Shown piece after piece: positions 680-26,316 of a DNA stretch of 64,000 nucleotides (position 1 is its first letter; every line of letters starts with the position of its first letter). The translations under genes and the position numbers were made by a program. The notes under the pieces were generated by a model. It was given only the letters and a program-made list of their open reading frames with translations, made no database searches and was not told the DNA's origin. The stretch spans positions 62,001 to 126,000 of the IMG/VR virus record IMGVR_UViG_3300037502_003770, one strand, 5' to 3'.

Positions 680-2052
680 GTTTATGAAAATATTATTAAA
701 TATTTCCACTTTAAACCTTTAAGAATTTAACCTCTTAACTGTCTCGGTATTACGGATAATACCTCTATCTCCTCATGTAAACAATCGGAGATTGCATTTG
801 AATACTTCTTCATTATATTATAACTACCATTTACATCAGCATTTATAACTATCCCTTTTGAAGATTTAAATAATTTTGTTGTAATCCTACTACCCAAATA
901 ACTATCTTTCTTACATAAAGACTCATTATCTAAAAAAGAACACTTACTTGTATAAGATTCCTCTTGTCTTACAAGTTTGATTCCCTTTTCAAATAACTTG
1001 TACTCTAACATAGAAAATAATTTATAATAAGGTATCATTACAAAATTTTGATTATTTTTCTTTCCATTATTAATGTCTTGTTTCCATTCTTTATTTCTAC
1101 CTACTACTAAAGTATGATAGTTTTTTGAAACTAAATGATTCACTAATAATTTACTTATTTTATGTAAATAATCTTCTATTTTGTTATTTCTTCTTAAATT
1201 TAATTTTTCTATCCTTTTAGAAGTATAAACTCCTTTATCTAACTTACTTCTAAACTCAGCTAACTTCTTATTATAATATTGATTTATATTCTTTAATGGT
1301 TTACCATTTATTATTAAAGGTTGTTTATTATCAGAAAAAGTTAATGTTAATAAATTATTAACACCTACATCCGCTGAACACACCCTTTCTTTAGAAGATG
1401 GTTTAACAAAAAGAGATGTATCTATTTTTTTAGAATAAACAACTTCTATTACATAATATCCATATTTAGGAACAATTCTTACTTGTTTAATATTAGTTTT
1501 ATTCACTATCTTACTTTCTAATAAAATAGAAGTCATACTTAACTTAATCAACCCTTTAGAAAGAAATTTCTTATCTTTAGAAATAGCACCTTTTTCATAG
1601 GTTGTGATGTATTTTCTATTTTTATCTAAATATTTAGGAATATTAACCTTTTCATTATATTTTCCTTTTAATTTAAGTTTTAATAAAGAAAAGAAAGATT
1701 TAAAGTTTTTATCTACTAATTTTAAAGTTTGTTTAGATACTTTATCAGGTAACTCTCTATAATCAAAAGAATCTCTTACTTTATAATAGAGTTGTAAATA
1801 AGAAAGATATTTTTTTGTTTCAAAGAAATGTTGTCTTACAATAAAGAGGGCATAGTTATAGAGATTTCTACTTTTAGTACAAAGAGTTTCACATTCAGAA
1901 AAGAATTTATGATTAGGAGTTATTGTATATTTTTGTACTCTATTAACTAACATTTAAAATAAGTATATTTATATATAAATAGTAAAAATAAATTATTTTT
2001 ATTAACAGAAAGGTGTATAAAATATAATATAAAAATATTAACATTTTCAAAG
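680..2052 (-). mobile_element. Non-autonomous IS200/IS605-type (tnpB-only) element
   Basis: Boundaries inferred from restoring the host reading frame. Similar GAAAAT-containing imperfect hairpins at both ends; no tnpA. Confidence 0.7.
727..1953 (-). CDS. tnpB: RNA-guided endonuclease TnpB (IS200/IS605 OrfB, IS1341-like)
   Basis: N-terminal 'SRNLYNYALF'; RuvC motifs 'ADVGVNNL', 'QEESYTSKCS', 'INADVNGSYNI'. Confidence 0.93.
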   Translation of the reverse strand: MLVNRVQKYTITPNHKFFSECETLCTKSRNLYNYALFIVRQHFFETKKYLSYLQLYYKVRDSFDYRELPDKVSKQTLKLVDKNFKSFFSLLKLKLKGKYNEKVNIPKYLDKNRKYITTYEKGAISKDKKFLSKGLIKLSMTSILLESKIVNKTNIKQVRIVPKYGYYVIEVVYSKKIDTSLFVKPSSKERVCSADVGVNNLLTLTFSDNKQPLIINGKPLKNINQYYNKKLAEFRSKLDKGVYTSKRIEKLNLRRNNKIEDYLHKISKLLVNHLVSKNYHTLVVGRNKEWKQDINNGKKNNQNFVMIPYYKLFSMLEYKLFEKGIKLVRQEESYTSKCSFLDNESLCKKDSYLGSRITTKLFKSSKGIVINADVNGSYNIMKKYSNAISDCLHEEIEVLSVIPRQLRG

Positions 2053-2152
2053 TCTGAAATTTTAACAACATATATTAAAGGATTTTTGAATTCTTCAGAA
2101 AAAAAGTATTCTTTAAATAAAAAAGACTTATTAAAAATAAAAATTGATTTTT

Positions 2153-2704
2153 ATGAAAATAACGATTTATAATAATAACTTTCTTTATATAGAGTGTTTA
2201 ACTACAGCAGTATGTTATAATTTACATATAGATAATTTTTTTGATTCATTTAGGTATAATTACATAAATTATTTTAGTCAAAATAAATACCCTATTAGTT
2301 ATGATTTTTTGTTAAGTCTTGAAAATTATAAACAATACATTTTACCTGAAAATATTTATATCTTTCTTATAAAGAAATATAAAGATAACATCAGATATAC
2401 ATCTTCTGAATTATTTAATAAATTTGGAATAATTTATTCGTCTATTACATATAATATATGTTTAGAATTAATTAAAAATTATAGTGATTTTAAATTGAGT
2501 AAAATACCATCTAAATTTAGGGACATTAATTTATGTAAAGAAGCTTTAAAAAATAATTACTTATATTTAAGTTCAGTACCTAAAAAATTAAGAAATAATA
2601 AGGAAATACTTAATGTATATTTAGAATCTTTTATTAAATATACTAAAGAAAAATACGGTATTTCTGAAGAAAATATAGCTAAATTAAAAAACTTTTCTCT
2701 TTAA
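2153..2704 (+). CDS. YxE-leader protein with DUF4116-like repeats
   Basis: MKITIYNNNFLYIE leader; IPSKFRDINLCKEAL / VPKKLRNNKEI repeats. Confidence 0.65.
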   Translation: MKITIYNNNFLYIECLTTAVCYNLHIDNFFDSFRYNYINYFSQNKYPISYDFLLSLENYKQYILPENIYIFLIKKYKDNIRYTSSELFNKFGIIYSSITYNICLELIKNYSDFKLSKIPSKFRDINLCKEALKNNYLYLSSVPKKLRNNKEILNVYLESFIKYTKEKYGISEENIAKLKNFSL

Positions 2705-2705
2705 A

Positions 2706-3275
2706 ATGGAAATAATACTTACAAATAATATTAATTTTCTTTATATAGAAAAAGATGGTTTCCCAAATATAAGTATTTATAGTTTATATTTTGGAAATAA
2801 TCTTTCTTTTTTAGAATCTTATGCTGAAAAAAATGAATTTCGTTATTTAACTAATATTACTGCTGGTTATTTTTGGGATGTTGTAAGATATCTTACAGAT
2901 ATTAAATATATTAATAAATTAGCTGAATTTTATTCTTCTATTAATGATAGTAATAATATTTCTTTTATTCATTTAAATAGAACTTTTATAAATAAAGTTA
3001 ATAAAAAATATTTAAGTACTGAATTGTTTGAAATTATTACATCTAATAAATATTATGGTAACTCACTGAGTGATATTCCTAGTGAATTTAGGTCTTTAAA
3101 AGTATGTTTAAAATTTATTAAATCTGAACCTGAACAAATATATCATGTACCAAAACATTTAAAGAATAATAAAGAAATTATTAATACTTATATATTTCAT
3201 ACAATGGAAAATGCTTGTAGAAAATATAAGTTCTCAAAAGAAATATCAGAACAATTAAAAAACCTTTCTATATAA
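2706..3275 (+). CDS. YxE-leader protein with DUF4116-like repeats
   Basis: MEIILTNNINFLYIE; IPSEFRSLKVC; C-terminal LKNLSI shared with neighbours. Confidence 0.65.
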   Translation: MEIILTNNINFLYIEKDGFPNISIYSLYFGNNLSFLESYAEKNEFRYLTNITAGYFWDVVRYLTDIKYINKLAEFYSSINDSNNISFIHLNRTFINKVNKKYLSTELFEIITSNKYYGNSLSDIPSEFRSLKVCLKFIKSEPEQIYHVPKHLKNNKEIINTYIFHTMENACRKYKFSKEISEQLKNLSI

Positions 3276-3276
3276 A

Positions 3277-3840
3277 ATGAATCAAATAATAATATATACT
3301 GAAACTAATTTTTATGTTGAAACATATAAAACTTTATTCTTAAATAAAAAAACAAACTTACATATATGGTTTCTTTGTAATATAAATAATTTTTCTGATA
3401 ATATAATTATTAGAGATAAAAAAACTGATAAAAGATATATTAATTTAGAAATTAAAAGAAGAATATACGATAGTATTGAAAATATATTCCCATTTAAACA
3501 TGAAAAAATAAGTTTATTAATAGTAAAAAACTTTTTTGATGTAATAAAACATATCAAAGCTTTTAAATCTGTGAAAAATGTTACTTATGAAATAAGTAAA
3601 TATTTTATTGAAAATAATAAATATCAAAGATTACCAAGCATAAAAAAGAAATATAGAACGCTTGAAATTTGTAAGTTAACAATAAAAAATAATTCTACTT
3701 ATATAAGTGATGTACCTGAAGAATTATTAAATAACGAAGAAATCATAAATACATATCTACAAACTTTAATTAATGAAAATATTAAACGTGCTAAATTTTC
3801 TGAAGAAACTATAACTAAATTAAAAAACCTTTCTATATAA
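3277..3840 (+). CDS. YxE-leader protein with DUF4116-like repeats
   Basis: MNQIIIYTETNFYVE; KKYRTLEICKL, VPEELLNNEEI. Confidence 0.65.
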   Translation: MNQIIIYTETNFYVETYKTLFLNKKTNLHIWFLCNINNFSDNIIIRDKKTDKRYINLEIKRRIYDSIENIFPFKHEKISLLIVKNFFDVIKHIKAFKSVKNVTYEISKYFIENNKYQRLPSIKKKYRTLEICKLTIKNNSTYISDVPEELLNNEEIINTYLQTLINENIKRAKFSEETITKLKNLSI

Positions 3841-3841
3841 A

Positions 3842-4327
3842 ATGAAAATTTATTTGAATTTTTATAATTATTTCTATTTTGAATCTTCTGTAAAAACGTA
3901 CTCTCTTTTGAAAAATACAGTTTATTTTCAATTAGCACTGGAGATTTTTTTCGATAGAAATTTTTATAATAAGATTTTTTCGCCACTTACTAAAAACTAT
4001 TATGATTATTCTATTCGTTATAATAAGAAATTTTCAGAAAAACTTAGTATTATGATTAGTAAGTACATGATAAAAGATAATTATGAAATATATCGTGATT
4101 TTTCTTATGAATTACAAACTTTAGAAAATACCTTACTTTATTTAGGTATTATAATTGAAAAGTACAATCACGTAAGTCATTATAATTTATCTGTTATTCC
4201 TAGTAAATTATTAAAAACTAAAGAAATTACACAAAAAATAGCAATGGTACGTATTAAATCTTTATCTTTTGAAGAAGAATTTAACCAAGAATATATTGAA
4301 TCAGTTTTAAAAATTTTAACATTATAA
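3842..4327 (+). CDS. YxE-leader protein (divergent paralog)
   Basis: MKIYLNFYNYFYFE; VIPSKLLKTKEI. Confidence 0.6.
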   Translation: MKIYLNFYNYFYFESSVKTYSLLKNTVYFQLALEIFFDRNFYNKIFSPLTKNYYDYSIRYNKKFSEKLSIMISKYMIKDNYEIYRDFSYELQTLENTLLYLGIIIEKYNHVSHYNLSVIPSKLLKTKEITQKIAMVRIKSLSFEEEFNQEYIESVLKILTL

Positions 4328-4345
4328 AATAAATTAAGTATTATA
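4316..4345 (+). promoter_or_regulatory. Phage-type promoter TTAACA-N16-GTATTATA
   Basis: Motif recurs about 25 times upstream of genes with a 16(17)-bp spacer. Confidence 0.7.
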
Positions 4346-4376
4346 TTTAACATTAAACAAAAACAATCAAACAATT

Positions 4377-6161
4377 ATGTTCAACAAACTAACAACAACA
4401 GGGAAAGCGTTAATTGCCCTACTTATTATTGGTTTACTTATTTGTGGTAAGTTCTTTATTTTCGATAGATTACCTCAAGAAGTTCAAGAATCTCAACATT
4501 TTGGTAAAGTAAGTTTACCAGATTCACCTGAAGCATCTTTAACAGGAAATGCTGCTATTAAATTAGAATTTCCTAAAGAAACAGATGCAAATAATGGTGG
4601 TACAAAAATCATTTGGAAAATGATGGCGTGGCAAAGTCAAAATGGAATTGTTTATTCAAATGGAGGTTCTACCACTAAAGAAAATAGTCTATTTGATAAA
4701 GCTAAATTAGATGTAACACTAGAAAGACAAGATGATTGTTTTAAAAGTTGTGCAGATTTAGTAGCTTTCACTAAACAATACAAAGAAAACCCTGAAACAC
4801 CAGCTGTTTTTATTACATTTATGGGTTCTGGAATTCCAGCCTATATTTCAGGAATTTCTAAACAAGTGGAAGATTTAGGACCTGAATATCAACCAGTAGC
4901 TTTTCTAACAACTGGAAAATCTTATGGTGAAGACCAAATTATAGGTGATAAAAAATATAAAGATAATAAACAAAATCTAAAAGGTGCTACGGTTGTAGGT
5001 GTACGAATGGATGGTGATTTAGATTTAGCTTTAAAACTTTGTGGTGATAATGGAATAAAAGTAAATGTAGATGATAAAGTTTACGACCCTGAAGCTTTAA
5101 ACTTTATGTATTCAGGAACTTTCATGGATGCAGTTGTTATGTATAATAATAATTATTCTGAAACTCGAAAAATCGCTATTAATGGTAAAACAATTGGTAG
5201 AGATACAACAATTAGTGCTGATTTAGTTGCAACATGGACACCAGGCGATGTTAAAGCAAAACAAGGTAGAGGTGGTGTAACAATTATTTCCACTAAACAA
5301 TATGCGAGTATTATGCCAAATATCACAATTACTTGTAAGAAATGGCTAAACGACCACCGAATACAAGCTCAAGAAATTACAAAAGCATGTGCTATCGCAG
5401 GAGACCAAATCAGGACATTTGACGATGTTAAGAAATATGTATCTCGTTTAAATACTGATTTTTATAATGAAAAAGATGCTTCACCTGAATATTGGTACAA
5501 ATATTATAATGGTGAACAAATTGATGAAGATACGAGGTTAGGTGGTTCAATGGTATTTAACTTAGGTGATATGGCAAATATGTTAGGTATCTTCATTGAA
5601 GGACAAACAGACCATACAGATATTTATAAATCAGTTTATAATACCTTTGGTACGCTTCAAAGCAAATATTACCCTAATGATTTACCTAAATACTTAGAAT
5701 ATACTAAGGCTTTTGATAAAACAGTTTTACAAACAGTAATTAATGAAAATCCTGAATTACTCACAGGTAAAATCAATTTAATTGATTATAGTAAAACAGA
5801 AAAAGGCGACCAAATTGGTAATAAATCTTATAATATTGAATTTGCATCAGGTTCATCAGAACTTACCGAAAGTGGCAAACGAGAATTAGATGAAATTTAT
5901 ACTAATATTGTTTCAGCTGACGGTACAAAAGTAGAATTGATTGGTCATACTGATAATCAAGGTATTTCCTCTGAAAACTTATCTCTTTCTGAAAGAAGAG
6001 CCAAATCAGCACTAGAATATCTAAAACAAAAAGGTGTGGAATCTCAAAGATTAGTATCTAAAGGTAGAGGTGATAGTGAACCAGTTGCAGATAATTCCAC
6101 AAGTGCAGGTAGAGCTAAAAATAGAAGGGTAAATATTTCACTCTTTGCTATTAAAGAATAA
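4377..6161 (+). CDS. ABC-type (NitT/TauT-like) substrate-binding protein fused to C-terminal OmpA peptidoglycan-binding domain
   Basis: N-terminal TM anchor; OmpA_C motifs 'IEFASGSSEL','GHTDNQG','NLSLSERRA','GRAKNRRV'. Confidence 0.85.
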   Translation: MFNKLTTTGKALIALLIIGLLICGKFFIFDRLPQEVQESQHFGKVSLPDSPEASLTGNAAIKLEFPKETDANNGGTKIIWKMMAWQSQNGIVYSNGGSTTKENSLFDKAKLDVTLERQDDCFKSCADLVAFTKQYKENPETPAVFITFMGSGIPAYISGISKQVEDLGPEYQPVAFLTTGKSYGEDQIIGDKKYKDNKQNLKGATVVGVRMDGDLDLALKLCGDNGIKVNVDDKVYDPEALNFMYSGTFMDAVVMYNNNYSETRKIAINGKTIGRDTTISADLVATWTPGDVKAKQGRGGVTIISTKQYASIMPNITITCKKWLNDHRIQAQEITKACAIAGDQIRTFDDVKKYVSRLNTDFYNEKDASPEYWYKYYNGEQIDEDTRLGGSMVFNLGDMANMLGIFIEGQTDHTDIYKSVYNTFGTLQSKYYPNDLPKYLEYTKAFDKTVLQTVINENPELLTGKINLIDYSKTEKGDQIGNKSYNIEFASGSSELTESGKRELDEIYTNIVSADGTKVELIGHTDNQGISSENLSLSERRAKSALEYLKQKGVESQRLVSKGRGDSEPVADNSTSAGRAKNRRVNISLFAIKE

Positions 6162-6183
6162 AATATAACCTTATTTAAAATAA

Positions 6184-6227
6184 AAAAACTCTCAATTTTA
6201 ACGATTGGGGGTTTTTTTTGTAATATA
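6184..6227 (+). terminator. Intrinsic terminator hairpin overlapping promoter TTAACG-N16-GTAATATA
   Basis: aaaactctcaat...attgggggtttt followed by a T-run; TTAACG lies in the loop. Confidence 0.65.
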
Positions 6228-6249
6228 AATAAACATAAACAACATTATA

Positions 6250-6855
6250 ATGAAACTAACTTATTCTATTTCAGAAAATAATTATATTGGAATTAGCAAT
6301 CAAATTTTCTTTTATGAGTTACTATTTGGTTTATCTATATTAAAAAATAATACAGTTTATTTTAGCATACCTTCTTCTTATAGTGAAAGGTTATCTGAAT
6401 CATTAAAAATAATTACAGGAAATATTGAATCTTTAATAAAAGTTGATAATAAAATTAAATATGTTGATGTTATATTTTCAAGTTCTATTGAGAAAGCTGA
6501 AATATCATTTTCTTCTCATCATAAATTTAGTTTAGATATAAATGATAAATTAAATATATCTTACTTAATTGAGAGAATACAAAAATTTTCTAATTTAAAA
6601 GCATTAGAAAATATCAATGTTACTGACGAAACAATGGAACTTTCAGAAGGCTCCGTTGCTTTATTAAAAACAGCTTTAGAAAAATTAGAACCTTCTATTC
6701 AAGAAGCTATTTTATTAAATGATATACCTACTTTATTGAAAATTGCTTTAGTAAATAAACTATATAGATTAGTTGATACTAATTTAGAATTTGATAATAT
6801 TCTAAAAGTAGAAGATATTGCAACAGCTTTACAATTTTTACCTAGATTAAATTAA
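6250..6855 (+). CDS. Hypothetical protein
   Basis: 201-aa ORF downstream of a promoter. Confidence 0.6.
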   Translation: MKLTYSISENNYIGISNQIFFYELLFGLSILKNNTVYFSIPSSYSERLSESLKIITGNIESLIKVDNKIKYVDVIFSSSIEKAEISFSSHHKFSLDINDKLNISYLIERIQKFSNLKALENINVTDETMELSEGSVALLKTALEKLEPSIQEAILLNDIPTLLKIALVNKLYRLVDTNLEFDNILKVEDIATALQFLPRLN

Positions 6856-6856
6856 T

Positions 6857-7791
6857 ATGAAGGATGATATTTTTTTACAAATTGATATAAATACTGGTCA
6901 CACAAAATACTTTGAACGTGACAGTAAATTTAATTTAAAACTTTCTTTAATTATTATTTATTTTACAGAAGAGACTTTTTTGAATAAAAATGGTTTGTAT
7001 CTTTTACTTATAATGAAAGATGGTAAAACCATTTTCTTTAAAGATTTTAGACATCAAAAAATAATTTATTATGTTGGAAATTAGTATATATTATAATTAT
7101 ACAACTTACAATGAAATTTTTGATATTAGCGTATTGAAATCATGTCTTAATATACAGATAAAAGAATATATAGTTTTCCATGAATATATACAATCTTTTT
7201 CTAAGTTAATTTCATATTATAATAAAAATCTTCGTAACTTAAAATATTATGTTAATAAAAATTAAACTCTCAGAACATTGTTTTTATATTGAGGATTCTT
7301 TATACTCAAGACCTTTTACAAGAAGGAACTTTGCTTTTGATTTAATTTTAAATAATTTTAATGAAATAACATATTTTTTCAATAATAATTTTTATTTAAC
7401 ATGTAATATAAATAAAAATAATATTGAATATTTTGATATTTCACTAATGACTGGTATTAAAAATTTTCTTAATTTAACGCATTATATACCAACATAAATG
7501 TTAGACATTATTTTATATATAGATTGCTTTCAATATATTGAGGCAACAATAGTGGATATCGGTTCACCAAAAAAAATCTTATTTAGATTAGATTTAAATA
7601 ATAAAAATAGAATTTTTATTGAAATAAATAGATTTTCTTTAAAGAAAGGTTATTTTTCATTAATTAACTTTATAAAAGAACGCAAAATTTTATTTAATGA
7701 TTTAGATTATATAAATATTTTAGATTTAAAATATTATTTTAAAATATCAAATTCTATCAAAGAGAAAGATTCTCACCTTGCTTTTCTCTGA
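6857..7791 (+). repeat. Four tandem small YxE-leader / LKYY-type paralogous ORFs (6857, 7071, 7249, 7498)
   Basis: Shared Y-x-E leader and YY-containing ends; overlapping or abutting start/stop. Confidence 0.7.
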
Positions 7792-9072
7792 ATTTAACTG
7801 AAAAACTTTATAAGAATGTAAACATTCTTCAATAGAAACTCTATATCTCATTTTAGAGTTTTTTATTTTAAGGTAAACTTCCTTCCAATCCTTACAATTA
7901 ATAAAAGTTTCCTTCCATTGGTCTTTTATTAACAGATTTGGATAAAAATTTCCCTTATTTCTTTTAATTATACATTCTATTCCCCTGCGTAAAATTTCTA
8001 TTGAGGCATTAACAGCATCGCTGTAATCATATTGCAAATTGCCTATAATAGATGAATACGCAGGATTTATTCTGTATAATTTAATATCTTCAATAAATAA
8101 CCTTTTTGAAAGATTTTCTATAAAAAGATTTCTTTTCCAAAGGTTATTATTTTTTCTATTATATTTTCTTCCTTGACCAGCATTTTTACTTTTAAAAGAT
8201 AAGTCTTCAATAAAAACCGCTTTACAATTATAATACTTTGCAACTAAAGAAATCTTCTTAGAGATTTCAATTACTTCATGTTTAATTTTATTCTGAAAGT
8301 ACTTTGCTTCTTGAGAATCAGTTGATAATTTTAAGGAAATAAATTTATCAGTTAGTTCTTTTAAAGAAAACTCTTGGCAATGAATAAGTTTATCATCTTC
8401 CATAATAGAAATACCTATATTATTAGGATTCATATCTATCCCTAAATATCTTTCTTTTGAAGGGAGAAATTTCTTTTCTTGAGATTTAAATTCTTCAAAA
8501 GAAATATAAATGTATTTTAAATCAAGTTTTACAGAAAATTTATAACCATTCTCAAAACAATCAATATCATTTAATTCCTCAAGTTTAAATAATTCCTTTT
8601 TAATATTTCTTCTTAAAGAAGGGAGGTATAAAGGAATATGTAAATTTCTATTTACTTTAAAAGTGATTTTATTGTTATCAATAATATCTAATTCAAAATA
8701 AGTATTTCCTTTATTAGATGTTGTTCCTTGACAAGTAATAGGTGATAATTTATTTATTTTAAATTCATCATTACTTATCTTACCTTTACATCTTTCATAA
8801 AAGTTATTCTTTCCACCAAAAATAACTTTTTGATTTTGAAATCTTGTATGAACATCTTTTCCTTCTAAAATAGCGTATTCTATTTGTTTAGAATTAAGCT
8901 TTCCAATATTATTTAAACCTTTAAGTAAAGATTTCATTTCTTTAATATCTGTTATCCCTTCAAAATATCTATTATATGAAAACCTTATTACAGAAGAGAA
9001 TTGTTTCATTAAAGAATGGATTTCTTTTAATGAATTTACATCAGTAGTATAAGGCATTTTAATAGTTTTCAA
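7747..9072 (-). CDS. tnpB: TnpB-related RNA-guided nuclease, Zn-finger-less type, copy A (TTG start)
   Basis: RuvC-I YLGIDMN, RuvC-II FIEDL, INPAYSSIIG, RuvC-III SDAVNASIEI. Confidence 0.85.
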   Translation of the reverse strand: MKTIKMPYTTDVNSLKEIHSLMKQFSSVIRFSYNRYFEGITDIKEMKSLLKGLNNIGKLNSKQIEYAILEGKDVHTRFQNQKVIFGGKNNFYERCKGKISNDEFKINKLSPITCQGTTSNKGNTYFELDIIDNNKITFKVNRNLHIPLYLPSLRRNIKKELFKLEELNDIDCFENGYKFSVKLDLKYIYISFEEFKSQEKKFLPSKERYLGIDMNPNNIGISIMEDDKLIHCQEFSLKELTDKFISLKLSTDSQEAKYFQNKIKHEVIEISKKISLVAKYYNCKAVFIEDLSFKSKNAGQGRKYNRKNNNLWKRNLFIENLSKRLFIEDIKLYRINPAYSSIIGNLQYDYSDAVNASIEILRRGIECIIKRNKGNFYPNLLIKDQWKETFINCKDWKEVYLKIKNSKMRYRVSIEECLHSYKVFQLNSEKSKVRIFLFDRI

Positions 9073-9176
9073 AAGTCTTTAATGTTTATTATAAATAGTA
9101 AAAATAAATTATTTAGTATATAATTTTATAACGAATTTAATATATAAATGTATTTATAAAATAAACTTTTCAAAAA

Positions 9177-11370: not shown

Positions 11371-12162
11371 ATGATTACTTACAAAAAAGAAGAACTTATT
11401 TTATCAGTAAATGACCTTTCTGTAAAGTATGGTGATAAACAAATATTAAAAGATATTTCTTTTGATATTCATAATATTACAAGACCAAATCTTACTCAAG
11501 GACAAATCATATCTATTTGTGGTAGAAGTGGTTGTGGTAAAACATCTTTATTTAAAACTATATCAGGTTTTTTAAAACCAACAACAGGAACTATAAAAAT
11601 AGGTGTTGAACAAAAAGATGTAATTATGGGTGAGGTTGGTGTTATTCAACAAGATTATCCTTTATTTAATCATAGAACTGTTTATGAAAATCTTTCTCTT
11701 AGTTTAAAAAACGTTAAGACAGATAACGAAAAGAAAGAAAAAATACATCATTATTGCGATTTATTTAATCTTTTGGAACATTTAAATAAATACCCTTCAC
11801 AACTATCAGGTGGTCAAAGACAAAGAGTATCTATATTACAACAGGTATTAACTGAAAATAAGTTTATTCTTATGGATGAACCATTTTCAGGATTAGATGT
11901 TTTAATGAAAGATAAAGTTATTGAACTTATGTTAAAGGTTTCAAATCTTGATGAAATGAATACTTTAATAATAGTTTCTCATGATATTGAATCATCTTGC
12001 GCTATTTCTGATACTGTACATATTTTAGCAAATAAAGATAATACAGGCTCTACAGTTGTTAAATCATATGACTTTCTAAAAGAAAATCTTGCTTATAGAA
12101 AAGATATTAAAGATGATTATAATTTCAAAAGAATTATTAATGAAATAAAAAGTTTAATCTAA
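11371..12162 (+). CDS. ABC transporter ATP-binding protein (NitT/TauT-like)
   Basis: Walker A GRSGCGKT, signature LSGGQRQR, Walker B ILMDEPF, H-loop SHD. Confidence 0.95.
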   Translation: MITYKKEELILSVNDLSVKYGDKQILKDISFDIHNITRPNLTQGQIISICGRSGCGKTSLFKTISGFLKPTTGTIKIGVEQKDVIMGEVGVIQQDYPLFNHRTVYENLSLSLKNVKTDNEKKEKIHHYCDLFNLLEHLNKYPSQLSGGQRQRVSILQQVLTENKFILMDEPFSGLDVLMKDKVIELMLKVSNLDEMNTLIIVSHDIESSCAISDTVHILANKDNTGSTVVKSYDFLKENLAYRKDIKDDYNFKRIINEIKSLI

Positions 12163-14254
12163 TGCAGATACTTATTTATTTAGAAAGGCATTCAAAATAT
12201 TTTGAATATTATTATGATAATTCTTTTGAAGAAAGTTTAGTATTTGAAATTAGAACATCTTTTTCGTTTGAATTTGTTAAAAATTTTATAATAGAAATAT
12301 GGGAAAAAAATAATGATTCTTGGTATTATTATAATAAATTAAAATATTACGTATGTTAAATATAGGTATTATTATTTTAAATAATGATTTTCGTTATTAT
12401 GAATATTTTATTGGTATATTTGTTTTTGAAATTGATAATTTTGTTTTTTCTGAAACTTTTGAAATTGGTTATCATATTAGACTAGAAAGTTTAAGAAAAA
12501 ACGGTAAGCGTTATTTTATTGCAAATGTTTTTAATTTAAAATATTACTTATGATAAGAATAAATTTTAATAATGGTCTTTATGAAGAATGGTTACATAAT
12601 TGTAATATATATACTTTTGTTACTTTAGTGTATTATTTTGAATGTGTAAGCTTTTTAAATTCAAGTTTTCAAATTAATGAATTAAAATTTAAAGGGAATT
12701 ATTTTTATTATAAAAATATTAATCTTCTTAATTTAAAATATTACTTATGATTCATATTTTTTCTCTTAATAAAAACATTTTTTATTCAGAAAAATTTATA
12801 TTTAATGCTGATGTATTTCTTGTTCGTTTAAATATTAATAATTATGTTGAAAGTATTATGTTTGATTATAATTTTATTCTATTAGAAATGGAATATTCGA
12901 TGTTTATAGAAATTAATAAACTTCTTAAATTAAAATATTATTTAAGTTATTACTTATGGCTGTAAATATATATTTAACAAATTCTTCTTATAGGGAAAGA
13001 CAACATGAATATTATATTAGTAATATATTTCATAATGAAAATACTATTTTCAGTTCGATATATTCTTTACAATTAGCATCTTTAATAAAAAATAAAATCT
13101 TTTATTATTCAATAGTACAAAAATATAATACTGTTTTAAAATTAAAATATTATTTATGGGAATAAAAATTTGTTTTAACAATACTACATGGAATTTTTAT
13201 ATTGAATTTTTTTCTTATAAAGAGTGTATTTTCACTATTAAAATTTTATCTAATTTAATAACATCTACATTAATTGGAAATAAATTACAAGATGTTGTTT
13301 TAAAAATAAAAAATAATACACTATTAACAACTGATTCCATTAAAAACGTTACCACTAATGTTCTTAATTTAAAATTTTATATATGATAATAAGTATTAAA
13401 ATTTCTAATAATAATTTTTCTTATGACGAAAATATTTCCAGTATTTATGATAATACTATAATAACTAACTTATGGATTTTTAAATGTTTTGAAGATAGAA
13501 TTTTTATTAACACAATAAATCAAATAATAGAAATGATTTACTATATTACAATTAATAATTTCACAGTATACAGTAATAATAAATATTATAAAACTTAAAG
13601 AACTAAAATGAGAATAAATATTAAAATAAAAACATATTTCTTTAAATATGAAGAATTTAATTTAGTAGATGAAAATATGATAACTCATCTAGACCTTTCA
13701 AATATCTTTTATTTTGAAAGAAGTTATTTTTCTTTAAATGTAGATAATTATAAAATATATGCAATTTATAAAAATAGATTTCTTTATTTTGAAAATCGTG
13801 ATGTTAATTTACTTAAATTAAAATATTATCTATGAGATTACAAATTGTTTTTAATTTTGGAGGTTATTATAGTGAACTTGATAAATATGTAATTGTTTAC
13901 ATTTATCCAAAATATTATGATATTTATTTTAATGATGTATTTTATTATATTGATTCAAATATAAAATTAATAGAAGTAAGGCATTTAAACAGCAAAAAAT
14001 ATTCTCGTGAATATAAAGATTTCATTTTAAAATACTATACATAATGAAGATAGAAATTAAATCAACATATTTTACGTATTATGAAAGACTTGGTTATGAT
14101 GTTCAAAATTATTTTTCTTTAAATTTAGATTGGATTTTTTTTAGAAGATATAGATTTATATAAAAATGAATTTATTATGAATTTTGTAGGTTTTGGTCAA
14201 AAATGTTTTTATTCAAAAAATAGTAATTTACTTAAATTAAAATATTATATATAA
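12162..14254 (+). repeat. Tandem array of ten ~65-76 aa YxE-leader/LKYY paralogs (last one frameshifted)
   Basis: ORFs at 12162,12353,12550,12747,12956,13156,13383,13608,13832,14044; period about 200-230 bp. Confidence 0.8.
14044..14254 (+). pseudogene. LKYY-family ORF with +1 frameshift in T8 tract (14135-14142)
   Basis: Removing one T gives MKIEIKSTYFTYYE...NLLKLKYYI*. Confidence 0.7.
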
Positions 14255-14258
14255 AATA

Positions 14259-15581
14259 TTAAATTCTTTCAAAGACAAAAGTTTTCACCTTGCTTTTCTC
14301 TGAACTTAACTGAAAAACTTTATAAGAATGCAAACATTCTTCAATAGAAACTCTATATTTCAATTTAGAGTTTTTTATTTTAAGAGAAATTTCTTTCCAA
14401 TCTGTACATTTAATAAAAGTTTCCTTCCAACGGTCTTTTATTAACAAATTGGGATAAAAATTTCCCTTATTTCTTTTAATTATACATTCAATTCCTCTGC
14501 GTACAATTTCTATTGAGGCATTAATAGCATCAGTATAATCATGTTGCAAATTGCCTATAATAGACGAATACGCAGGATTAATTCTGTATAATTTAATATC
14601 TTCTATGAATAACCTTTTACTTAAATTTTCAAAAAACAGATTCCTTTTCCAAAGGTCATTATTTTTTCTGTTATATGTTTTTCCCTTACCAGCGTCTTTT
14701 TGTTTAAATGATAAATCTTCAATAAAAACTGCTTTACACTTATAATATTTTGCAAGTAATGAAATCTTTTTTGAAATTTCAATTACTTCATGTTTAATTT
14801 TATTCTGAAAGTACTTTGCTTTTTCAGAATCAGTAGATAGTTTTAAAGAAATAAATTTATCAGTTAATTCCTTTAAAGAAAACTCTTGACAATGAATAAT
14901 TTTATCATCTTCCATTATAGATATACCTATATTATTGGGATTCATATCTATTCCTAGATACCTTTCTTTTGAAGGAAATTTCTTTTCTTCATATTTAAAT
15001 TCTTCAAAAGATATATAAATATATTTTAAGTCAAGTTTTACACAAAATTTATATCCTTTCTCACCAAACTTTATATCATTTAATTCTTGAAGTTTAAATA
15101 ATTCTTTTTTAATATTCTTTCTTAAAGAAGGAAGGTATAAAGGTATATGCACATATTTATTTACTTTAAATATAATTTGATTATTATCAATTATATCTAA
15201 ATTAAAATAAGAATTTCCTTTATTATTAGTTATTCCTTGACACGTAATAGGTGAAAGTTTATTTATTTTAAATTCATCTTTACTTATTTTAGCTTTACAC
15301 CTTTCATAAAAATTATTCTTTCCTCCGAAAATAACCTTTTCATTTTGAAATCTTGTATAAACATCTTTTCCTTCTAAAATAGCATACTCTATTAGTTTAG
15401 AATTAAGTTTATTTATATTATTTAAATTAGAAAGTAAAAATTTTATTTTCTTAATATCAGATATCCCTTCAAAATATCTATTATAGGAGTACCTTACTAC
15501 AGAGGAGAATTGTTTCATCAAAGAATGAATTTCTTTTAATGAAGTATCATCTGTAGTGTAAGGCATTTTAATAGTTTTCAA
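14259..15581 (-). CDS. tnpB: TnpB-related RNA-guided nuclease, copy B
   Basis: Close paralog of 7747-9072; D/E/D RuvC residues present. Confidence 0.85.
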   Translation of the reverse strand: MKTIKMPYTTDDTSLKEIHSLMKQFSSVVRYSYNRYFEGISDIKKIKFLLSNLNNINKLNSKLIEYAILEGKDVYTRFQNEKVIFGGKNNFYERCKAKISKDEFKINKLSPITCQGITNNKGNSYFNLDIIDNNQIIFKVNKYVHIPLYLPSLRKNIKKELFKLQELNDIKFGEKGYKFCVKLDLKYIYISFEEFKYEEKKFPSKERYLGIDMNPNNIGISIMEDDKIIHCQEFSLKELTDKFISLKLSTDSEKAKYFQNKIKHEVIEISKKISLLAKYYKCKAVFIEDLSFKQKDAGKGKTYNRKNNDLWKRNLFFENLSKRLFIEDIKLYRINPAYSSIIGNLQHDYTDAINASIEIVRRGIECIIKRNKGNFYPNLLIKDRWKETFIKCTDWKEISLKIKNSKLKYRVSIEECLHSYKVFQLSSEKSKVKTFVFERI

Positions 15582-15627
15582 AAGTCTTTAATGTTTATTA
15601 TAAATAGTAAAAATAAATATAATTTTT

Positions 15628-15657
15628 TTAACAAATCATTTTAAATCAAGTATTATA
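15628..15657 (+). promoter_or_regulatory. Phage-type promoter upstream of the tRNA
   Basis: TTAACA-aatcattttaaatcaa(16)-GTATTATA. Confidence 0.7.
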
Positions 15658-15671
15658 TAAACAAACACAAT

Positions 15672-15745
15672 GGACCTATAGCGCAACTGGTCAGAGCAGC
15701 TGACTCATAATCAGCAGGTTTCAGGTTCAAATCCTGATAGGTCCA
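15672..15745 (+). tRNA. tRNA with CAT anticodon, most likely tRNA-Ile2 (lysidine, reads AUA); CCA not encoded
   Basis: Cloverleaf GGACCTA/TAGGTCC, GCTGA-CTCATAA-TCAGC, TCAGG-TTCAAAT-CCTGA. G1-C72 excludes initiator; C4-G69/C5-G68 as in Ile2. Confidence 0.9.
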
Positions 15746-15763
15746 CTTTAAAATTTTATAAAA

Positions 15764-20665: not shown

Positions 20666-20742
20666 TACTTAAAAAACAATAACTTACTTAATAAAAAGTC
20701 TATTTTAAAAGAATAGGCTTTTTATTTTTAAATAAATATTTT

Positions 20743-22365: not shown

Positions 22366-22381
22366 CAATAAAAATCTTTTT

Positions 22382-22654
22382 ATGGAAAAAATAGAACTGC
22401 AAGAAGTGGAAATTATGGATGAAGATACTATTTCTTCAAAACAAATAGTCCTTTATAATGACGATTTCAATACATTTGATAATGTTATTAAATGTTTAAT
22501 GGTTTATTGTAAACATGTGTATGAACAAGCACTACAATTTGCTATGCAAGTGCATGAAAAAGGTAGATGTTCCGTTAAAGAGGGTTCATATAAAGAATTA
22601 AAACCTATTTGCGAGGCTTTACTTGAGAAAGGTTTATCAGCTCAAATAGAATAA
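22382..22654 (+). CDS. clpS: ATP-dependent Clp protease adaptor ClpS
   Basis: LYNDDFNTFDNV ... EQALQFAMQVHEKGRC; Bacteroidota-type short form. Confidence 0.92.
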   Translation: MEKIELQEVEIMDEDTISSKQIVLYNDDFNTFDNVIKCLMVYCKHVYEQALQFAMQVHEKGRCSVKEGSYKELKPICEALLEKGLSAQIE

Positions 22655-23261
22655 AAGATATATGAAACATAACATACAACAAGAAAAATTTTCTTTATTT
22701 ATTGAAAAAAATTTCATAATAGAATATGAAAAAAATACCACATCATATAGAATAGATGTTTATAATGATGTAAAAAAATATGATAAATATCTTATTGACA
22801 AATATATTAAAACGGATGATACTTTTCGAGTACTAAACTTATTTCAAAATTTAAAATTAGAATATTATAATGGTTTATTATCATTAAATTTTGAAAGAAA
22901 AGAACATATTTATATAAATTATAGTTCTCTTGAATATGGTACTCAACATAATAAAGAAAAATTCCTAAACGAAGTAATTAAATATTTACCGCAAACAGAT
23001 TTAACTAAAAAAATAGATTTTTCTAAAAGAAATATTTTTGGTAGTACAAATCATGTATTTATTAAAGACATACCTTTTTTTAATGAAAAATTTATTCCAT
23101 TAAATGTAGAACCTTATGTAAAAAATGCTATTACTAATAATAATTTTTTAATAAATTATATATAGTAAGGATATTATTCACCGTTTTAACAAAAAACATT
23201 ATTTCTTGTAGTATAAATCAGTTCAAACAAAACAACAATTAAACAAAAACAATTTTCTCTT

Positions 23262-24071
23262 ATGAAAAGATTCCTTTTCCTCTTATGTACAATCATTACT
23301 TTAGTATCGATGCAATCATGCGAAATGATTGAATCTGGATATGTTGGTATCAAAGTTAATAAAACTGGTGATAATCAAGGTGTTCAAAACATAGTAGAAG
23401 TTACTGGGTGGTGTTTCTATAATCCAATTACAAGTAGTATTTACGAGTTTCCAACACACGTTCAACACGTAGATTATGAAGCTTTTGAAGTAGGTGCTAA
23501 AGATGCTGCATTATTTACTATTAAACCATCATTAAATTATATGGTTTCACCAAGTAAAGTACCATTTATCTTTGTTAAATATAGAAAACCTTTAAATGAA
23601 ATTGAACAACAATTTATCAGAACTACATTATTTGAAGCTTATAAAATTTCAGCAAACAGGTATAGTTCAGATAGTTTACTTAAATCAAGACAAATCTTCG
23701 AGGATAATGTAAGAAAAATCTTGGTTGATTCTTTAGGAAAAGATGGTTTTATTTTAAATCAACTAACTTGTAATATCTCAATTCCAAAAAGTTTGCAAGA
23801 ATCTATTGAAAGAAAAAATAATAGCGTTCAGGCATCAATGCAAGCAGAGAATGAAGTTAAAACAGCTGAGGCTAATGCCAGAATTGCAATTGCCCAAGCC
23901 AATGGAGAAGCACAGGCTGCATTAATCGCAGCGAAAGCTGAGGCTGAAGTAAATAGACTACGTCAACAAAGTTTAACACCTTTGCTTATTCAACAGCAGT
24001 ATATTCAAAAATGGAATGGTGTTTTACCTCAATATGGACAAGTTCCTTCTTTAATGAAACAAGTTCAATAA
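23262..24071 (+). CDS. SPFH/band-7 (prohibitin-like) lipoprotein
   Basis: Lipobox MQSC, 'IESGYVGIKV', AEA-rich coiled coil, 'QYIQKWNGVLP'. Confidence 0.9.
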   Translation: MKRFLFLLCTIITLVSMQSCEMIESGYVGIKVNKTGDNQGVQNIVEVTGWCFYNPITSSIYEFPTHVQHVDYEAFEVGAKDAALFTIKPSLNYMVSPSKVPFIFVKYRKPLNEIEQQFIRTTLFEAYKISANRYSSDSLLKSRQIFEDNVRKILVDSLGKDGFILNQLTCNISIPKSLQESIERKNNSVQASMQAENEVKTAEANARIAIAQANGEAQAALIAAKAEAEVNRLRQQSLTPLLIQQQYIQKWNGVLPQYGQVPSLMKQVQ

Positions 24072-24090
24072 GAAGAAATAAAATTATATT

Positions 24091-24125
24091 AAAAGACTTC
24101 TATTTTAAAAGATAGAAGTCTTTTT
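24091..24125 (+). terminator. Intrinsic terminator
   Basis: aaaagacttctat...atagaagtcttttt. Confidence 0.75.
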
Positions 24126-24139
24126 AAATAAAGATAAAT

Positions 24140-24935
24140 ATGTTTATAAAAATAATTATAACAACAAATACATTTTTCTATTCTGAATGTATTACTAGTA
24201 TATATGGGAATGGTAGTAGTTTATTATATTGTGAATATATCAATAGTCAATACTGTTTTAATTTTGAAAAAGCTACTGAATGGAATGCTTATTTCAAAAT
24301 TAATGAAAATTTATGGATTACTTTTCAATTACCTATGTCAGATTTTCATTTAAATGATGTGTATTTATTTTTAGACTTTCGTGATAAACATTCATATAAT
24401 AATTTATCTAATTTTTTTAAAAAATTTAAACCAAATGAATATAAATATTAATACAGAACATTGTTTTTATCAAGAAATTAATTATTATTTAGAATATAAT
24501 ATTAAACCAATTTTTATTTTAATAAATAAGTTTTTTTCTGAGGAATGGTTTCTTCCTTTAATTGGTATAACTTATTTTTATAATAATTTATTTCATAATA
24601 AAACAGTTAAATCTTTAAGAAAAACTCATCTTTATGAATATATATTATTAAGTTTTTTACGTATTAGGATGAAACTTGATAAATTAAATAAAACCACAAT
24701 AAAACAAAGTGTTGATAATTTTATTCATCATACACATATAACATATTATACAGAAAATATTTGTAAAGAATTAATAAAATATTATGGTATTGAAATTATT
24801 AAATTTTTACCAAATAAATTCTTTACTAAAAAACTGTATATTTTTATGTATGATTTATTAGGCAATGAATTGCTTTCTTTACATAAAATATCAAATTCTT
24901 TCAAAGACAAAGGTTTTCACCTTGCTTTTCCTTGA
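24140..24935 (+). repeat. Two YxE-leader ORFs (24140; 24435, whose 3' end runs into tnpB copy C)
   Basis: MFIKIIITTNTFFYSE; MNININTEHCFYQE. Confidence 0.6.
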
Positions 24936-26219
24936 ATTTAACTCAAAAACTTTATAAGAATGTAAACATTCCTCAATAGAAACTCTATATTTCAATCCAG
25001 AGTTTTTTATTTTAAGGGAAACTTCCTTCCAATCCTTACATTTAATAAAAGTTTCCTTCCAACGGTCTTTTATTAATAGATTTGGATAAAAATTTCCCTT
25101 ATTTCTTTTAATTATACATTGAATTCCTCTGCGTACAATTTCTATCGAGGCATTAACAGTATCAGTATAATCATGTTGCAAATTGCCTATGATAGATGAA
25201 TACGCAGGATTTATTCTGTATAATTTAATATCTTCAATAAATAATCTCTTTGAAAGGTTCTCTACAAACAAATTTCTTTTCCAAAGGTTATTATTTTTCC
25301 TGTTATATGTTGTTCCTTTACCAGCATTTTTATCTTTAAAAGATAAATCTTCAATAAAAACAGCTTTACAATTATAATATTTTGCAATCAAAGAAATCTT
25401 TTTTGAAATTTCGATTGTTTCAAATTGTATTTTATTTTGAAAGTACTTTGCTTTATCAGAAGAAGAATCTAATTTTAAAGAAATAAATTTATCTATTAAC
25501 TCTTTTAAAGAAAATTCTTGACAATAAATAAGTTTATCATCTTCCATAATAGAAATACCTATATTATTAGGATTCATATCTATTCCTAGATATCTTTCTT
25601 TTGAAGGGAGAAATTTCTTTTCTTCATTTTTAAATTCTTCAAAAGAAATATAAATATATTTTAAATCAAGTTTAATAGAAAATTTATAACCTTTTTCAAA
25701 ATTAGGTTTTACATCATTTAATTCTTGAAGTTTATACAAATCTTTTTTAATATTTTTCCTTAAAGAAGGTAAATATAAAGGTATATGTAATTTTTTATTT
25801 ACTTTAAAAATGATTTGATTATTATCAATTATATCTAATTCAAAATAAGAATTTCCTCTATTATTGGTAACACCTTGACACGTAATAGGTGAAAGTTTAT
25901 TTATTTTAAATTCATCTTTACTTATATTTCCTTTACATCTTTCATAAAAATTATTCTTTCCACCAAAAATAACCTTTTGATTTTTAAATCTTGTGTGAAC
26001 ATCTTTTCCTTCTAAAATAGCGTATTCTATTAATTTAGAATTTAAATCTTGAATATTATTTAAACCTTTAAGTAAAGACTTTATTTTTTTAATATCAGTT
26101 ATTCCTTCAAAATACCTATTATAAGAAAACCTTACTACAGAAGAGAATTGTTTCATTAAAGAATGAATTTCTTTTAATGAATTTACATCAGTTGTATAAG
26201 GCATTTTAATAGTTTTCAA
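24891..26219 (-). CDS. tnpB: TnpB-related RNA-guided nuclease, copy C
   Basis: Close paralog of copies A and B; GIDMN / FIEDL / TDTVNAS. Confidence 0.85.
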   Translation of the reverse strand: MKTIKMPYTTDVNSLKEIHSLMKQFSSVVRFSYNRYFEGITDIKKIKSLLKGLNNIQDLNSKLIEYAILEGKDVHTRFKNQKVIFGGKNNFYERCKGNISKDEFKINKLSPITCQGVTNNRGNSYFELDIIDNNQIIFKVNKKLHIPLYLPSLRKNIKKDLYKLQELNDVKPNFEKGYKFSIKLDLKYIYISFEEFKNEEKKFLPSKERYLGIDMNPNNIGISIMEDDKLIYCQEFSLKELIDKFISLKLDSSSDKAKYFQNKIQFETIEISKKISLIAKYYNCKAVFIEDLSFKDKNAGKGTTYNRKNNNLWKRNLFVENLSKRLFIEDIKLYRINPAYSSIIGNLQHDYTDTVNASIEIVRRGIQCIIKRNKGNFYPNLLIKDRWKETFIKCKDWKEVSLKIKNSGLKYRVSIEECLHSYKVFELNSRKSKVKTFVFERI

Positions 26220-26316
26220 AAGTATTTAATGTTTATTATAAATAGTAAAAATAAATTATTCTTTTAACAAATAGAAGTCTTTTCTGTATTATAAAATAAT
26301 AAACATTTATAAAAAA

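What the first reader, a model, noticed from the sequence alone, without database searches (positions are those of the whole stretch)
1974..26293. Two unrelated TnpB lineages share an identical 20-bp upstream motif and back-to-back promoter layout
Seen: TATAAATAGTAAAAATAAAT occurs at 1974, 9090, 15599 and 26237, 17-20 bp upstream of each tnpB start (sense strand ATTTATTTTTACTATTTATA). The 408-aa and 440-aa proteins are otherwise very different. Each motif is followed by a + strand TAAC-N16-(G/A)TA.. promoter (2002, ~9128, 15628, 26264). These four are the only minus-strand genes. Inference: a shared second promoter class (possibly late) or a shared element end that captured different nucleases, implying co-regulated or domesticated RNA-guided nucleases.
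Basis: partly seen in the sequence, partly recalled or inferred. Interest (0 to 1): 0.7.

Follow-up and report, generated by a model that had tools for sequence, protein, structure and literature searches.

The report
Late promoter module on phage TnpB genes
The repeated 20-bp motif is this huge T4-type phage's structural-gene ("late") promoter, in an extended version found only in front of its nine transposon-derived TnpB nuclease genes, so these selfish nucleases appear wired to be made late in infection.

Summary
TATAAATAGTAAAAATAAAT occurs exactly four times, each 17-20 nt upstream of one of the window's only four minus-strand genes.

The window lies in a 312.7-kb, 22% GC phage genome with a T4-type (Gp23) capsid. 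On the gene's sense strand the motif contains TACTATTTAWA, the most enriched upstream word genome-wide. It sits 5-45 nt before 62 of 441 predicted genes, including portal, major head, tail sheath and baseplate genes, so it is a late or structural promoter class. No transcript data exist.

All nine TnpB-type genes in the genome carry it (three lineages; Fisher p = 1e-8). Inside the window no other gene does.

The 14 nt upstream of the core (ATAATTTATTTTTA) are not part of the general consensus. They are shared almost only by TnpB genes.

A 97%-identical relative of the 408-aa TnpB sits in an intact IS607, with a serine-recombinase tnpA behind the same promoter type. The window's copy is a tnpA-less derivative, and its motif lies inside the left end, not at its tip. 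The 441-aa proteins are divergent TnpBs without a zinc finger.

Three of the four neighbouring plus-strand promoters fit the genome's sigma70-like early class.

Mobile selfish elements fit better than domesticated genes.

The parts
676..2052 (-). A1 element: tnpA-less IS607 derivative, made of right end, tnpB and a left end of about 100 nt
   Evidence: Homology at 95.9% to the IS607 of L038 runs from 1 nt before the ATG to genome 62676 (window 676), where both end in ...AAACGG|TT. Upstream, 76 nt align without gaps to the left end of C1, and the tip motif GAAAATGTTAAT resembles GG|TT(T)AGAAACTGTTAAT of C1 and L038.
727..1953 (-). tnpB A1 (408 aa), a canonical TnpB
   Evidence: Pfam OrfB_IS605 3e-18 and Cas12f1-like_TNB 1e-11; NCBIfam guided_TnpB 1.8e-48, over the cut-off.
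676..860 (-). Possible omegaRNA scaffold (3' end of tnpB plus right end)
   Evidence: MFE -39.6 kcal/mol, z = -3.3 against shuffles. No Rfam match. Inferred only.
1974..1993 (-). Motif copy 1: late-class promoter core (sense CTATTTA = window 1976-1982) plus the TnpB-specific upstream extension
2002..2030 (+). TTAACA-N17-TAATAT, matches the early-class consensus but lies inside the A1 left end, about 150 nt from the next + gene
7740..9113 (-). B1 unit: promoter plus a 441-aa divergent TnpB (CDS 7747-9072), ending 7 nt after the stop (TATTTTA)
   Evidence: Homology among 7 copies (B1-3, L020 x2, L022, L023) starts at (A)ATTTATTTTTAC and ends at ATATTTTA.
9090..9109 (-). Motif copy 2 (core 9092-9098), 19 nt from core to TTG start
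14252..15618 (-). B2 unit (CDS 14259-15581)
15599..15618 (-). Motif copy 3
15628..15656 (+). Early-class promoter TTAACA-N17-TATTAT, placed to drive tRNA-Met (15672-15746)
24884..26260 (-). B3 unit (CDS 24891-26219). Its 3' end overlaps the convergent ORF 24381-24935
   Evidence: The same insertion is present in the related contigs L020 and L022.
26237..26256 (-). Motif copy 4
26264..26292 (+). Early-class promoter TTAACA-N17-TATTAT before the metallophosphoesterase gene 26317-27108
23155..23240 (+). Empty site: the early promoter of the Band_7 gene. In the relatives L020 and L022 it carries an extra B copy flanked by a duplication of about 62 bp of this promoter region

Best explanation
The 20-mer is a promoter, read on the minus strand towards tnpB.

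Its core, TACTATTTAWA, is the phage's single-element promoter class for structural and other late genes. Its distal 10-14 nt (ATAATTTATTTTTA) form an extension that in this genome occurs almost only in front of TnpB-type genes.

The genes behind it are tnpA-less descendants of IS607-family elements, in three TnpB lineages. The intact element in a close relative already carries the same promoter type in its left end, in front of tnpA-tnpB.

Inferred steps:
- The elements have adapted to the phage's own late transcription machinery, so the nucleases are made late, when many replicated genome copies are present. This timing suits cut-and-repair homing, as for T4 homing endonucleases (PMC2988022).
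- Antisense placement inside early operons keeps them out of early transcripts.
- The near-identity of the extended module across lineages is best explained by common descent from an IS607 left end, plus ectopic recombination or gene conversion between promoter modules within one genome.
- The back-to-back layout arises because the units sit directly against the -35 box of sigma70-like early promoters, or carry such a box in their left end (A1).

Shown: motif class, its positions, its association with structural and TnpB genes, IS607 ancestry, unit boundaries.

Inferred: late timing, transcription start, homing, gene conversion.
For: Promoter class:
- ACTATTTA is the top upstream 8-mer: 46 genes, 12-fold enrichment.
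- 63 of 132 cores lie within 45 nt upstream of a same-strand start, against 4.3 expected (binomial p = 5.5e-57).
- Portal, major head (Gp23), tail sheath and baseplate wedge genes all have it.
- Late cores cluster at 140-240 kb and early-class promoters at 80-140 kb.
- Divergent gene pairs carry two inverted cores, so the element is directional.

Association with TnpB:
- 9 of 9 TnpB-type genes have the core, against 62 of 441 genes overall (p = 1.3e-8).
- One TnpB (C3) was found because of its promoter.
- Matches to the 14-nt extension: TnpB genes 6-14 of 14, other late promoters mean 6.0 and at most 11 (Mann-Whitney p = 1e-5, or 4e-4 when B counts once and A1, the reference, is left out).

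IS607 ancestry:
- L038 carries left end, TTTACTATTTATAAAT, a 190-aa Resolvase-domain tnpA and a tnpB 97% identical to A1.
- A1 and C1 align over 76 nt upstream.
- Relatives of the B family have a resolvase-like or HTH remnant upstream.
- No tnpA is present in this genome.

Mobility: extra or differently placed copies occur in close relatives.
Against: - No transcript data exist: no RNA run was listed, so neither the start site nor the timing is measured.
- The core differs from T4's TATAAATA in the sense orientation, and no gp55-like factor was identified. The only lead is a 150-aa ORF with a sub-threshold Sigma70_r2 match.
- A few non-structural genes (for example PhoH) also carry the core, so 'late' may be 'middle plus late'.
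- The extension could be functional (an operator or UP-like element) rather than a relic of descent.
- omegaRNAs are not demonstrated.
- The insertions seen in relatives carry duplications of about 62 and about 290 bp, which do not fit canonical IS607 or IS605 insertion.
Confidence: 0.65

Rival explanations
1. The motif is a transposon end: a shared terminal sequence recognised by one transposase, which has captured different nuclease genes.
For: Homology among all seven copies of the B unit begins exactly at the motif. A1 and C1, from different TnpB lineages, share a left end.
Against: In A1, C1 and the intact IS607 of L038, the element tip (GG|TTTAGAAACTGTTAAT) lies about 60-70 nt further out, so the motif is internal. 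C2 and C3 share only the promoter. The core is shared with 53 non-TnpB genes. No transposase gene is present in the genome.
Confidence: 0.1
2. The nucleases are domesticated phage genes, co-regulated with late genes to serve the phage, for example by cutting host or competitor DNA under RNA guidance.
For: Nine intact genes, all without tnpA and all behind one promoter type. The catalytic D-E-D is invariant in the B family. Phage TnpB relatives have been recruited as CRISPR effectors elsewhere (bioRxiv 10.64898/2026.04.20.719267).
Against: Copy number and location vary among very close relatives: an extra B copy in L020/L022, another site in L023, and an intact IS607 at a different place in L038. 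No CRISPR-like array lies next to any copy. The guide positions are simply flanking DNA and differ in every copy.
Confidence: 0.15
3. The functional reading is on the + strand: TATAAATA is the T4 late-promoter consensus and drives the downstream + strand genes, not tnpB.
For: The + strand of the motif begins with TATAAATA, and the phage has a T4-type capsid.
Against: Genome-wide the conserved word is (T)ACTATTTA in the sense orientation of the downstream gene. 25 of 63 sites read CTATTTAA, which removes TATAAATA. In long one-directional late gene blocks the core always points with the genes. Divergent pairs need two cores.
Confidence: 0.05
4. Chance similarity of AT-rich, low-complexity sequence.
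For: The genome is 22% GC. The same 20-mer occurs by chance in 14 unrelated IMG/VR contigs, and a 21-mer version in at least 120 metagenome contigs, none next to a TnpB.
Against: No exact match is expected in shuffles of the window. Position and orientation relative to gene starts are highly non-random.
Confidence: 0.01

Closest known systems
IS607-family insertion sequences (serine-recombinase TnpA plus TnpB); ISCaje4 of Campylobacter phage CP220 is a phage-borne example
   Same: TnpB with OrfB_IS605 and TNB domains. A 97% relative sits behind a Resolvase-domain tnpA. Ends carry GG|TT junctions. The 3' end is structured where an omegaRNA would lie.
   Different: No tnpA anywhere in this genome. 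The left end carries the phage's own late-class promoter. The B units are cut down to promoter plus ORF. Insertions in relatives come with duplications of about 62 and about 290 bp.
T4 homing endonuclease genes (I-TevI/II/III, seg, mob) and their regulation (PMC2988022)
   Same: Selfish nuclease genes embedded in early or middle units but driven by their own middle or late promoters. segD is likewise antisense to its neighbours. I-TevI has an operator overlapping its late promoter.
   Different: Here the nucleases are TnpB-type (presumably RNA-guided), not GIY-YIG or HNH. All nine share one extended promoter module. Regulation is untested. The genome's T5orf172/GIY-YIG gene also has the late core.
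T4-type late promoters (TATAAATA, gp55-dependent)
   Same: A single short AT-rich element 12-35 nt before the starts of structural genes, in a phage with a Gp23 capsid.
   Different: The sense-strand consensus is TACTATTTAWA, with an invariant C. gp55 and gp33 homologues were not identified.
PeSL promoter/stem-loop cassettes that shuffle genes in T4-type phages (PMC2839356, PMC4122927)
   Same: Sigma70-like early promoters with a hairpin are repeated through the early region. One B insertion in a relative is flanked by a direct repeat of such a promoter region, and its junction lies in the -35 box.
   Different: No mini-circles or recombination products were observed. The shared module on the TnpB genes is a late-type promoter, not an early one.

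Membership tests
TnpB (OMEGA RuvC nuclease of IS200/IS605/IS607), 408-aa protein | Matches to the curated family models over their cut-offs | tested here: met
   NF040570 165.7 bits (cut-off 100); PF01385 66.5 bits; PF07282 44.8 bits.
TnpB, 441-aa proteins (B family) | RuvC fold with a D-E-D triad and TnpB/Cas12f-like architecture | tested here: inconclusive
   D207, E283 and D346 are invariant in 40 homologues. Foldseek probability 1.0 to Cas12f, ISFba1/ISDra2 TnpB and Fanzor2, but the model is poor (pLDDT 58, TM 0.2-0.3). TIGR01766 and TIGR01765 score below their cut-offs. The profile comparison with the A family is not significant. Relatives carry PF27229 (SSO2105_N), and a 38% relative is annotated ISCaje4 TnpB.
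TnpB, 441-aa proteins (B family) | Zinc-finger TNB domain between RuvC-II and RuvC-III | tested here: not met
   No PF07282 match. There is no conserved CxxC pair, and only one Cys is invariant.
TnpB (both lineages) | omegaRNA encoded at the 3' end, with its guide taken from the flank | tested here: inconclusive
   The 3' regions fold better than shuffles (z = -3.3 and -2.2) and the 3' third of the B gene is the best conserved part, but there is no Rfam match and no RNA data.
IS607 element (A1 copy in the window) | Serine-recombinase tnpA upstream of tnpB | tested here: not met
   Absent from the window and from the whole genome. Present in the 97% relative L038. A1 is therefore a derivative, not an autonomous element.
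IS607 element (A1 copy in the window) | Left and right ends homologous to those of an intact element | tested here: met
   The right end is identical in position (...AAACGG|TT). The left end aligns to that of C1, and C1's aligns to L038's.
Phage late promoter class | Conserved element at a fixed short distance before structural genes, with a direction | tested here: met
Phage late promoter class | Transcripts that start just downstream, late in infection | not testable with these tools
   The phage is uncultured and no RNA run was listed.
T4-type gp55-dependent late promoter | TATAAATA consensus on the sense strand and a gp55-like sigma factor | tested here: not met
   The sense consensus is TACTATTTAWA. 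The only lead is a weak Sigma70_r2-like ORF with no PHROG match.
PeSL-type mobile regulatory cassette | Gene flanked by repeated promoter/stem-loop units, with circular excision products | tested here: inconclusive
   One relative shows a direct repeat of about 62 bp of an early promoter around a B copy. Circles cannot be tested. The laid contigs were uninformative.

The most novel reading that the evidence does not exclude
A portable 'late-expression module' of about 30 nt (TTAATAAAAATAATTTATTTTTACTATTTATA) is exchanged among three deeply divergent TnpB lineages in a huge T4-type phage. It serves both as their promoter and as the short homology through which tnpA-less nuclease genes spread to new sites next to phage promoters. 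This would be transposase-independent, promoter-mediated mobility of RNA-guided nucleases.
Probability: 0.2. Interest if true: 0.7.

Novelty: new variant of a known kind. Interest (0 to 1): 0.5.

Why it matters
TnpB genes are abundant in huge phages, but how they are expressed and kept there without a transposase is not known.

Here every TnpB gene of one phage, from three lineages, carries the phage's own structural-gene promoter in a TnpB-specific extended form. An intact IS607 in a sister phage has the same promoter type in its left end.

This suggests that these transposons have adapted to phage late transcription, the solution T4's protein-only homing endonucleases use. It gives a concrete, testable handle on timing, self-restraint and spread of RNA-guided nucleases in phage genomes.

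The analysis also gives a first two-class promoter map (early and late) for an uncultured 313-kb phage.

Tried and rejected
- Exact-motif scans of IMG/VR (14 loci) and of JGI metagenomes (at least 120 loci, 80 read) gave only chance hits in AT-rich DNA. None lay next to a TnpB or resembled this genome.
- Laying contigs of four DNA runs on window 22500-28000 showed only assembly-graph breaks at the repeats and no clear empty or filled alleles.
- No RNA run was listed.
- Rfam found no omegaRNA or RAGATH family in window 1-30000, only the tRNA.
- The generic sigma70 scan is not enriched over shuffles in this DNA and cannot support the + strand promoters. The genome-specific consensus can.
- The idea that the distal half of the motif is a general UP-like part of early promoters was rejected. 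Early promoters have T-rich or hairpin sequence there, not AAAAATAAAT.
- A CRISPR-like array downstream of B2 was looked for. The 2-kb 'non-coding' stretch is a tandem array of small ORFs.
- Canonical TAM|LE...RE|target logic was tried on the two empty/filled pairs and does not fit: the flanks are duplicated rather than contiguous.
- No multisubunit RNA polymerase and no clear late sigma factor were found.
- TnpB homologues at 54% identity in other phage-like contigs are also lone antisense genes, but with a different conserved upstream region and no CTATTTA.
Full report
**1. The observation**

TATAAATAGTAAAAATAAAT occurs exactly at window 1974, 9090, 15599 and 26237. No exact match occurs in 100 dinucleotide-preserving shuffles.

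Each copy lies 17-20 nt upstream, on the minus strand, of an ORF: 727-1953 (408 aa), 7747-9072, 14259-15581 and 24891-26219 (440-442 aa). These are the window's only minus-strand genes. The TTG starts of the longer genes are supported by the family's consensus N-terminus MKTIKLPYKT.

The three longer genes are paralogues (about 86% identity), and their upstream 56 nt are almost identical. The independent coincidence is therefore one: the 408-aa gene against this family.

**2. Context**

The window is bases 62,001-126,000 of a 312,694-bp IMG/VR virus record. It has 22% GC, CheckV rates it 96% complete, and it comes from a subsurface metagenome. Its major head protein is Gp23-type (PF07068, 1.5e-67), with thousands of T4-like relatives. 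It is thus a huge T4-superfamily phage.

**3. What the motif is**

In sense-oriented upstream regions of 441 predicted genes, the most enriched 8-mers are ACTATTTA, CTATTTAT and CTATTTAA (46 genes, 12-fold). TTTTAACA words form a second class.

Of the 132 CTATTTA cores in the genome, 63 lie within 45 nt upstream of a same-strand start, where 4.3 are expected. Typical distances are 12-34 nt.

The consensus is tA-CTATTTA-W-A-W-n-AAA, and positions further upstream carry almost no information. Divergent gene pairs have two inverted cores 10-17 nt apart, so the element has a direction.

Genes behind the core include the portal, the major head protein, the tail sheath and a baseplate wedge protein. 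The cores cluster at 140-240 kb.

The second class, ttttTTAACA(a/g)aa-N-tgTAATAT, has a leader of about 50 nt and often a hairpin around the -35 box. It clusters at 80-140 kb.

I read these as a late (structural) class and an early (sigma70-like) class. The timing is inferred from gene content, not measured.

**4. Link to TnpB**

The genome holds six canonical TnpB genes:
- A1, in the window
- A2, genome 195915-197117 (-)
- A3, genome 22209-23447 (+)
- C1, genome 216501-217736 (+)
- C2, genome 299232-300485 (+)
- C3, genome 142228-143403 (+)

It also holds the three B genes. All nine have the late core 14-41 nt upstream, against 62 of 441 genes overall (Fisher p = 1.3e-8). C3 was recognised as a TnpB only after its promoter drew attention. 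Within 60-140 kb the only late cores are the four in front of the window's TnpB genes.

**5. The extension**

The identity between A1 and B1/B3 runs 15-16 nt upstream of the core. The 99th percentile of 1953 promoter pairs is 7 nt.

Scored against ATAATTTATTTTTA, the seven best of all 132 cores are TnpB genes: A1, B1 and B3 at 14/14, C1 and C3 at 12, and B2 and C2 at 11. The other 54 late promoters average 6.0 and reach at most 11.

**6. Ancestry**

The closest relative of A1 (97% identity) lies on a 2.2-kb contig, L038, whose flanks match this genome at 97-100%. There it is the second gene of an intact IS607, laid out as follows:
- junction ...GG|TTTAGAAACTGTTAATTATTTTATAT...
- TTTCTTTACTATTTATAAATAAATA
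- a 190-aa Resolvase-domain tnpA
- tnpB
- ...AAACGG|TT

The element itself thus carries a late-type promoter in its left end.

In the window, homology to L038 starts 1 nt before the tnpB ATG and ends at window 676. tnpA is gone. The 76 nt upstream align without gaps to the left end of C1, which shares its tip with L038. The motif is therefore about 60 nt inside the A1 left end, and the TTAACA-N17-TAATAT at 2002 is also inside it.

No serine-recombinase gene exists in the genome.

**7. The B family**

No curated model reaches its cut-off, and profile comparison with the A family is not significant. Several lines nevertheless point to TnpB:
- D207, E283 and D346 are invariant.
- A low-confidence model matches Cas12f, TnpB and Fanzor2 at Foldseek probability 1.0.
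- Relatives are annotated IS605 OrfB or ISCaje4 TnpB.
- Relatives sit behind a resolvase-like fragment (CP220) or a MerR-like HTH fragment (LR756500).

The zinc-finger TNB domain is missing. The B family is a divergent, IS607-associated TnpB lineage.

Its unit in this phage group is minimal. It runs from (A)ATTTATTTTTACTATTTATA to ATATTTTA, 7 nt after the stop.

**8. Mobility**

Contigs L020 and L022 are about 90% identical to window 18-28 kb. They carry B3 at the same place, plus an extra copy in front of the Band_7 gene. This genome has the empty site at window 23155-23240.

The extra copy is flanked by a direct repeat of about 62 bp of the Band_7 early-promoter region. Its left junction lies in the -35 box: TTTTTTGTTAAAA|GAATAATTT, the same junction as at B3.

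In L023 a B copy lies between a full and a truncated copy of a T5orf172/GIY-YIG gene that is single in this genome.

These patterns indicate ongoing movement. They do not indicate canonical IS607 or IS605 insertion. Recombination through promoter homology, as described for PeSL cassettes in T4-type phages (PMC2839356), is a possible route but is not shown.

**9. The + strand promoters**

The sites at 15628 and 26264 fit the early consensus. They are placed to drive tRNA-Met and the metallophosphoesterase gene. The site at 2002 fits the consensus but lies in the A1 left end. The site near 9128 does not fit.

**10. Mechanism proposed**

Element-borne late promoters time TnpB synthesis to late infection, and antisense placement avoids early read-through. 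This parallels T4, where intron endonucleases are driven by their own middle or late promoters inside earlier units and segD is antisense (PMC2988022).

The near-identical module in three lineages is best explained by descent from an IS607 left end with homogenisation by ectopic recombination. A specific function of the extension, as an operator or an UP-like element, cannot be excluded.

**11. Verdict**

'Shared element end' is only partly supported, and 'domesticated' is not supported.

This is a new variant of known themes: IS607/TnpB elements in phages, and late-promoter control of selfish nucleases. Interest is moderate.

Noticed in passing
window 12162-14163 (+): About ten tandem small paralogous ORFs (65-76 aa, period about 200 bp) with a conserved junction TTAAnTTAAAATATTAnTTATG fill the apparent 2-kb gap downstream of B2. 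It is the lowest-GC part of the window (17%).
   Followed up: partly
window 36917, 46231, 46652, 47492, 51488, 53078, 53572, 53960 (+): Near-identical early promoter cassettes in which the -35 hexamer sits in the loop of a hairpin (AGACTTCTTTTTTAACAGAAAGAAGTCT ... TGTAATAT). They resemble the PeSL promoter/stem-loop cassettes of T4-type phages.
   Followed up: partly
L020:7310-8800 and L022:6573-8062, against window 23155-23240: Related phage contigs carry an extra B copy in front of the Band_7 gene, flanked by a diverged direct repeat of about 62 bp of the early promoter region. This genome has the empty site.
   Followed up: yes
L023:6215-8193, against genome 309484-309816: A B copy lies between a complete and a 3'-truncated copy of a T5orf172/MUG113 (GIY-YIG-like) gene, and both copies have late cores. 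In both empty alleles examined, the sequence that follows the B right end is preceded by CTTTT(C)A, similar to the unit's own end TATTTTA.
   Followed up: partly
L038, against genome 216106-216210 and 213122-213249: The two flanks of the intact IS607 in the relative match places 2.86 kb apart in this genome. That variant therefore lacks most of a 437-aa gene and part of a 906-aa gene, through an adjacent deletion or a chimeric contig.
   Followed up: no
window 15672-15746 and genome 299118-299192 (L018:18118-18192): Two tRNA-Met(CAT) genes each lie directly next to a TnpB unit. B2 is divergent to one, and C2 follows about 20 nt downstream of the other.
   Followed up: partly
genome 49196-49648 (L009:9196-9648, +): A 150-aa ORF between the primase and PhoH genes has sub-threshold Sigma70_r2 (E = 0.01-0.07) and C-terminal HTH matches. 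It is a weak candidate for the late-promoter specificity factor.
   Followed up: partly
genome 10504, 158320, 158926, 170224, 177989, 195067, 198029, 198635, 199851: A second subtype of the late promoter, TTAAAAGAATACTATTTAAAAGAAAA, overlaps the 3' ends of the upstream genes and is conserved over about 35 nt between unrelated loci.
   Followed up: no
L042:6001-7200 and L045:6001-7179: TnpB homologues at 54% identity in other phage-like contigs (31-35% GC) are also single genes antisense to long one-directional arrays of small genes. They have their own conserved upstream region of about 130 nt and no CTATTTA.
   Followed up: partly
window 24891-24935: The 3' end of B3 overlaps the convergent ORF 24381-24935 by 45 nt, so late tnpB transcripts would be antisense to the end of that early gene.
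   Followed up: no
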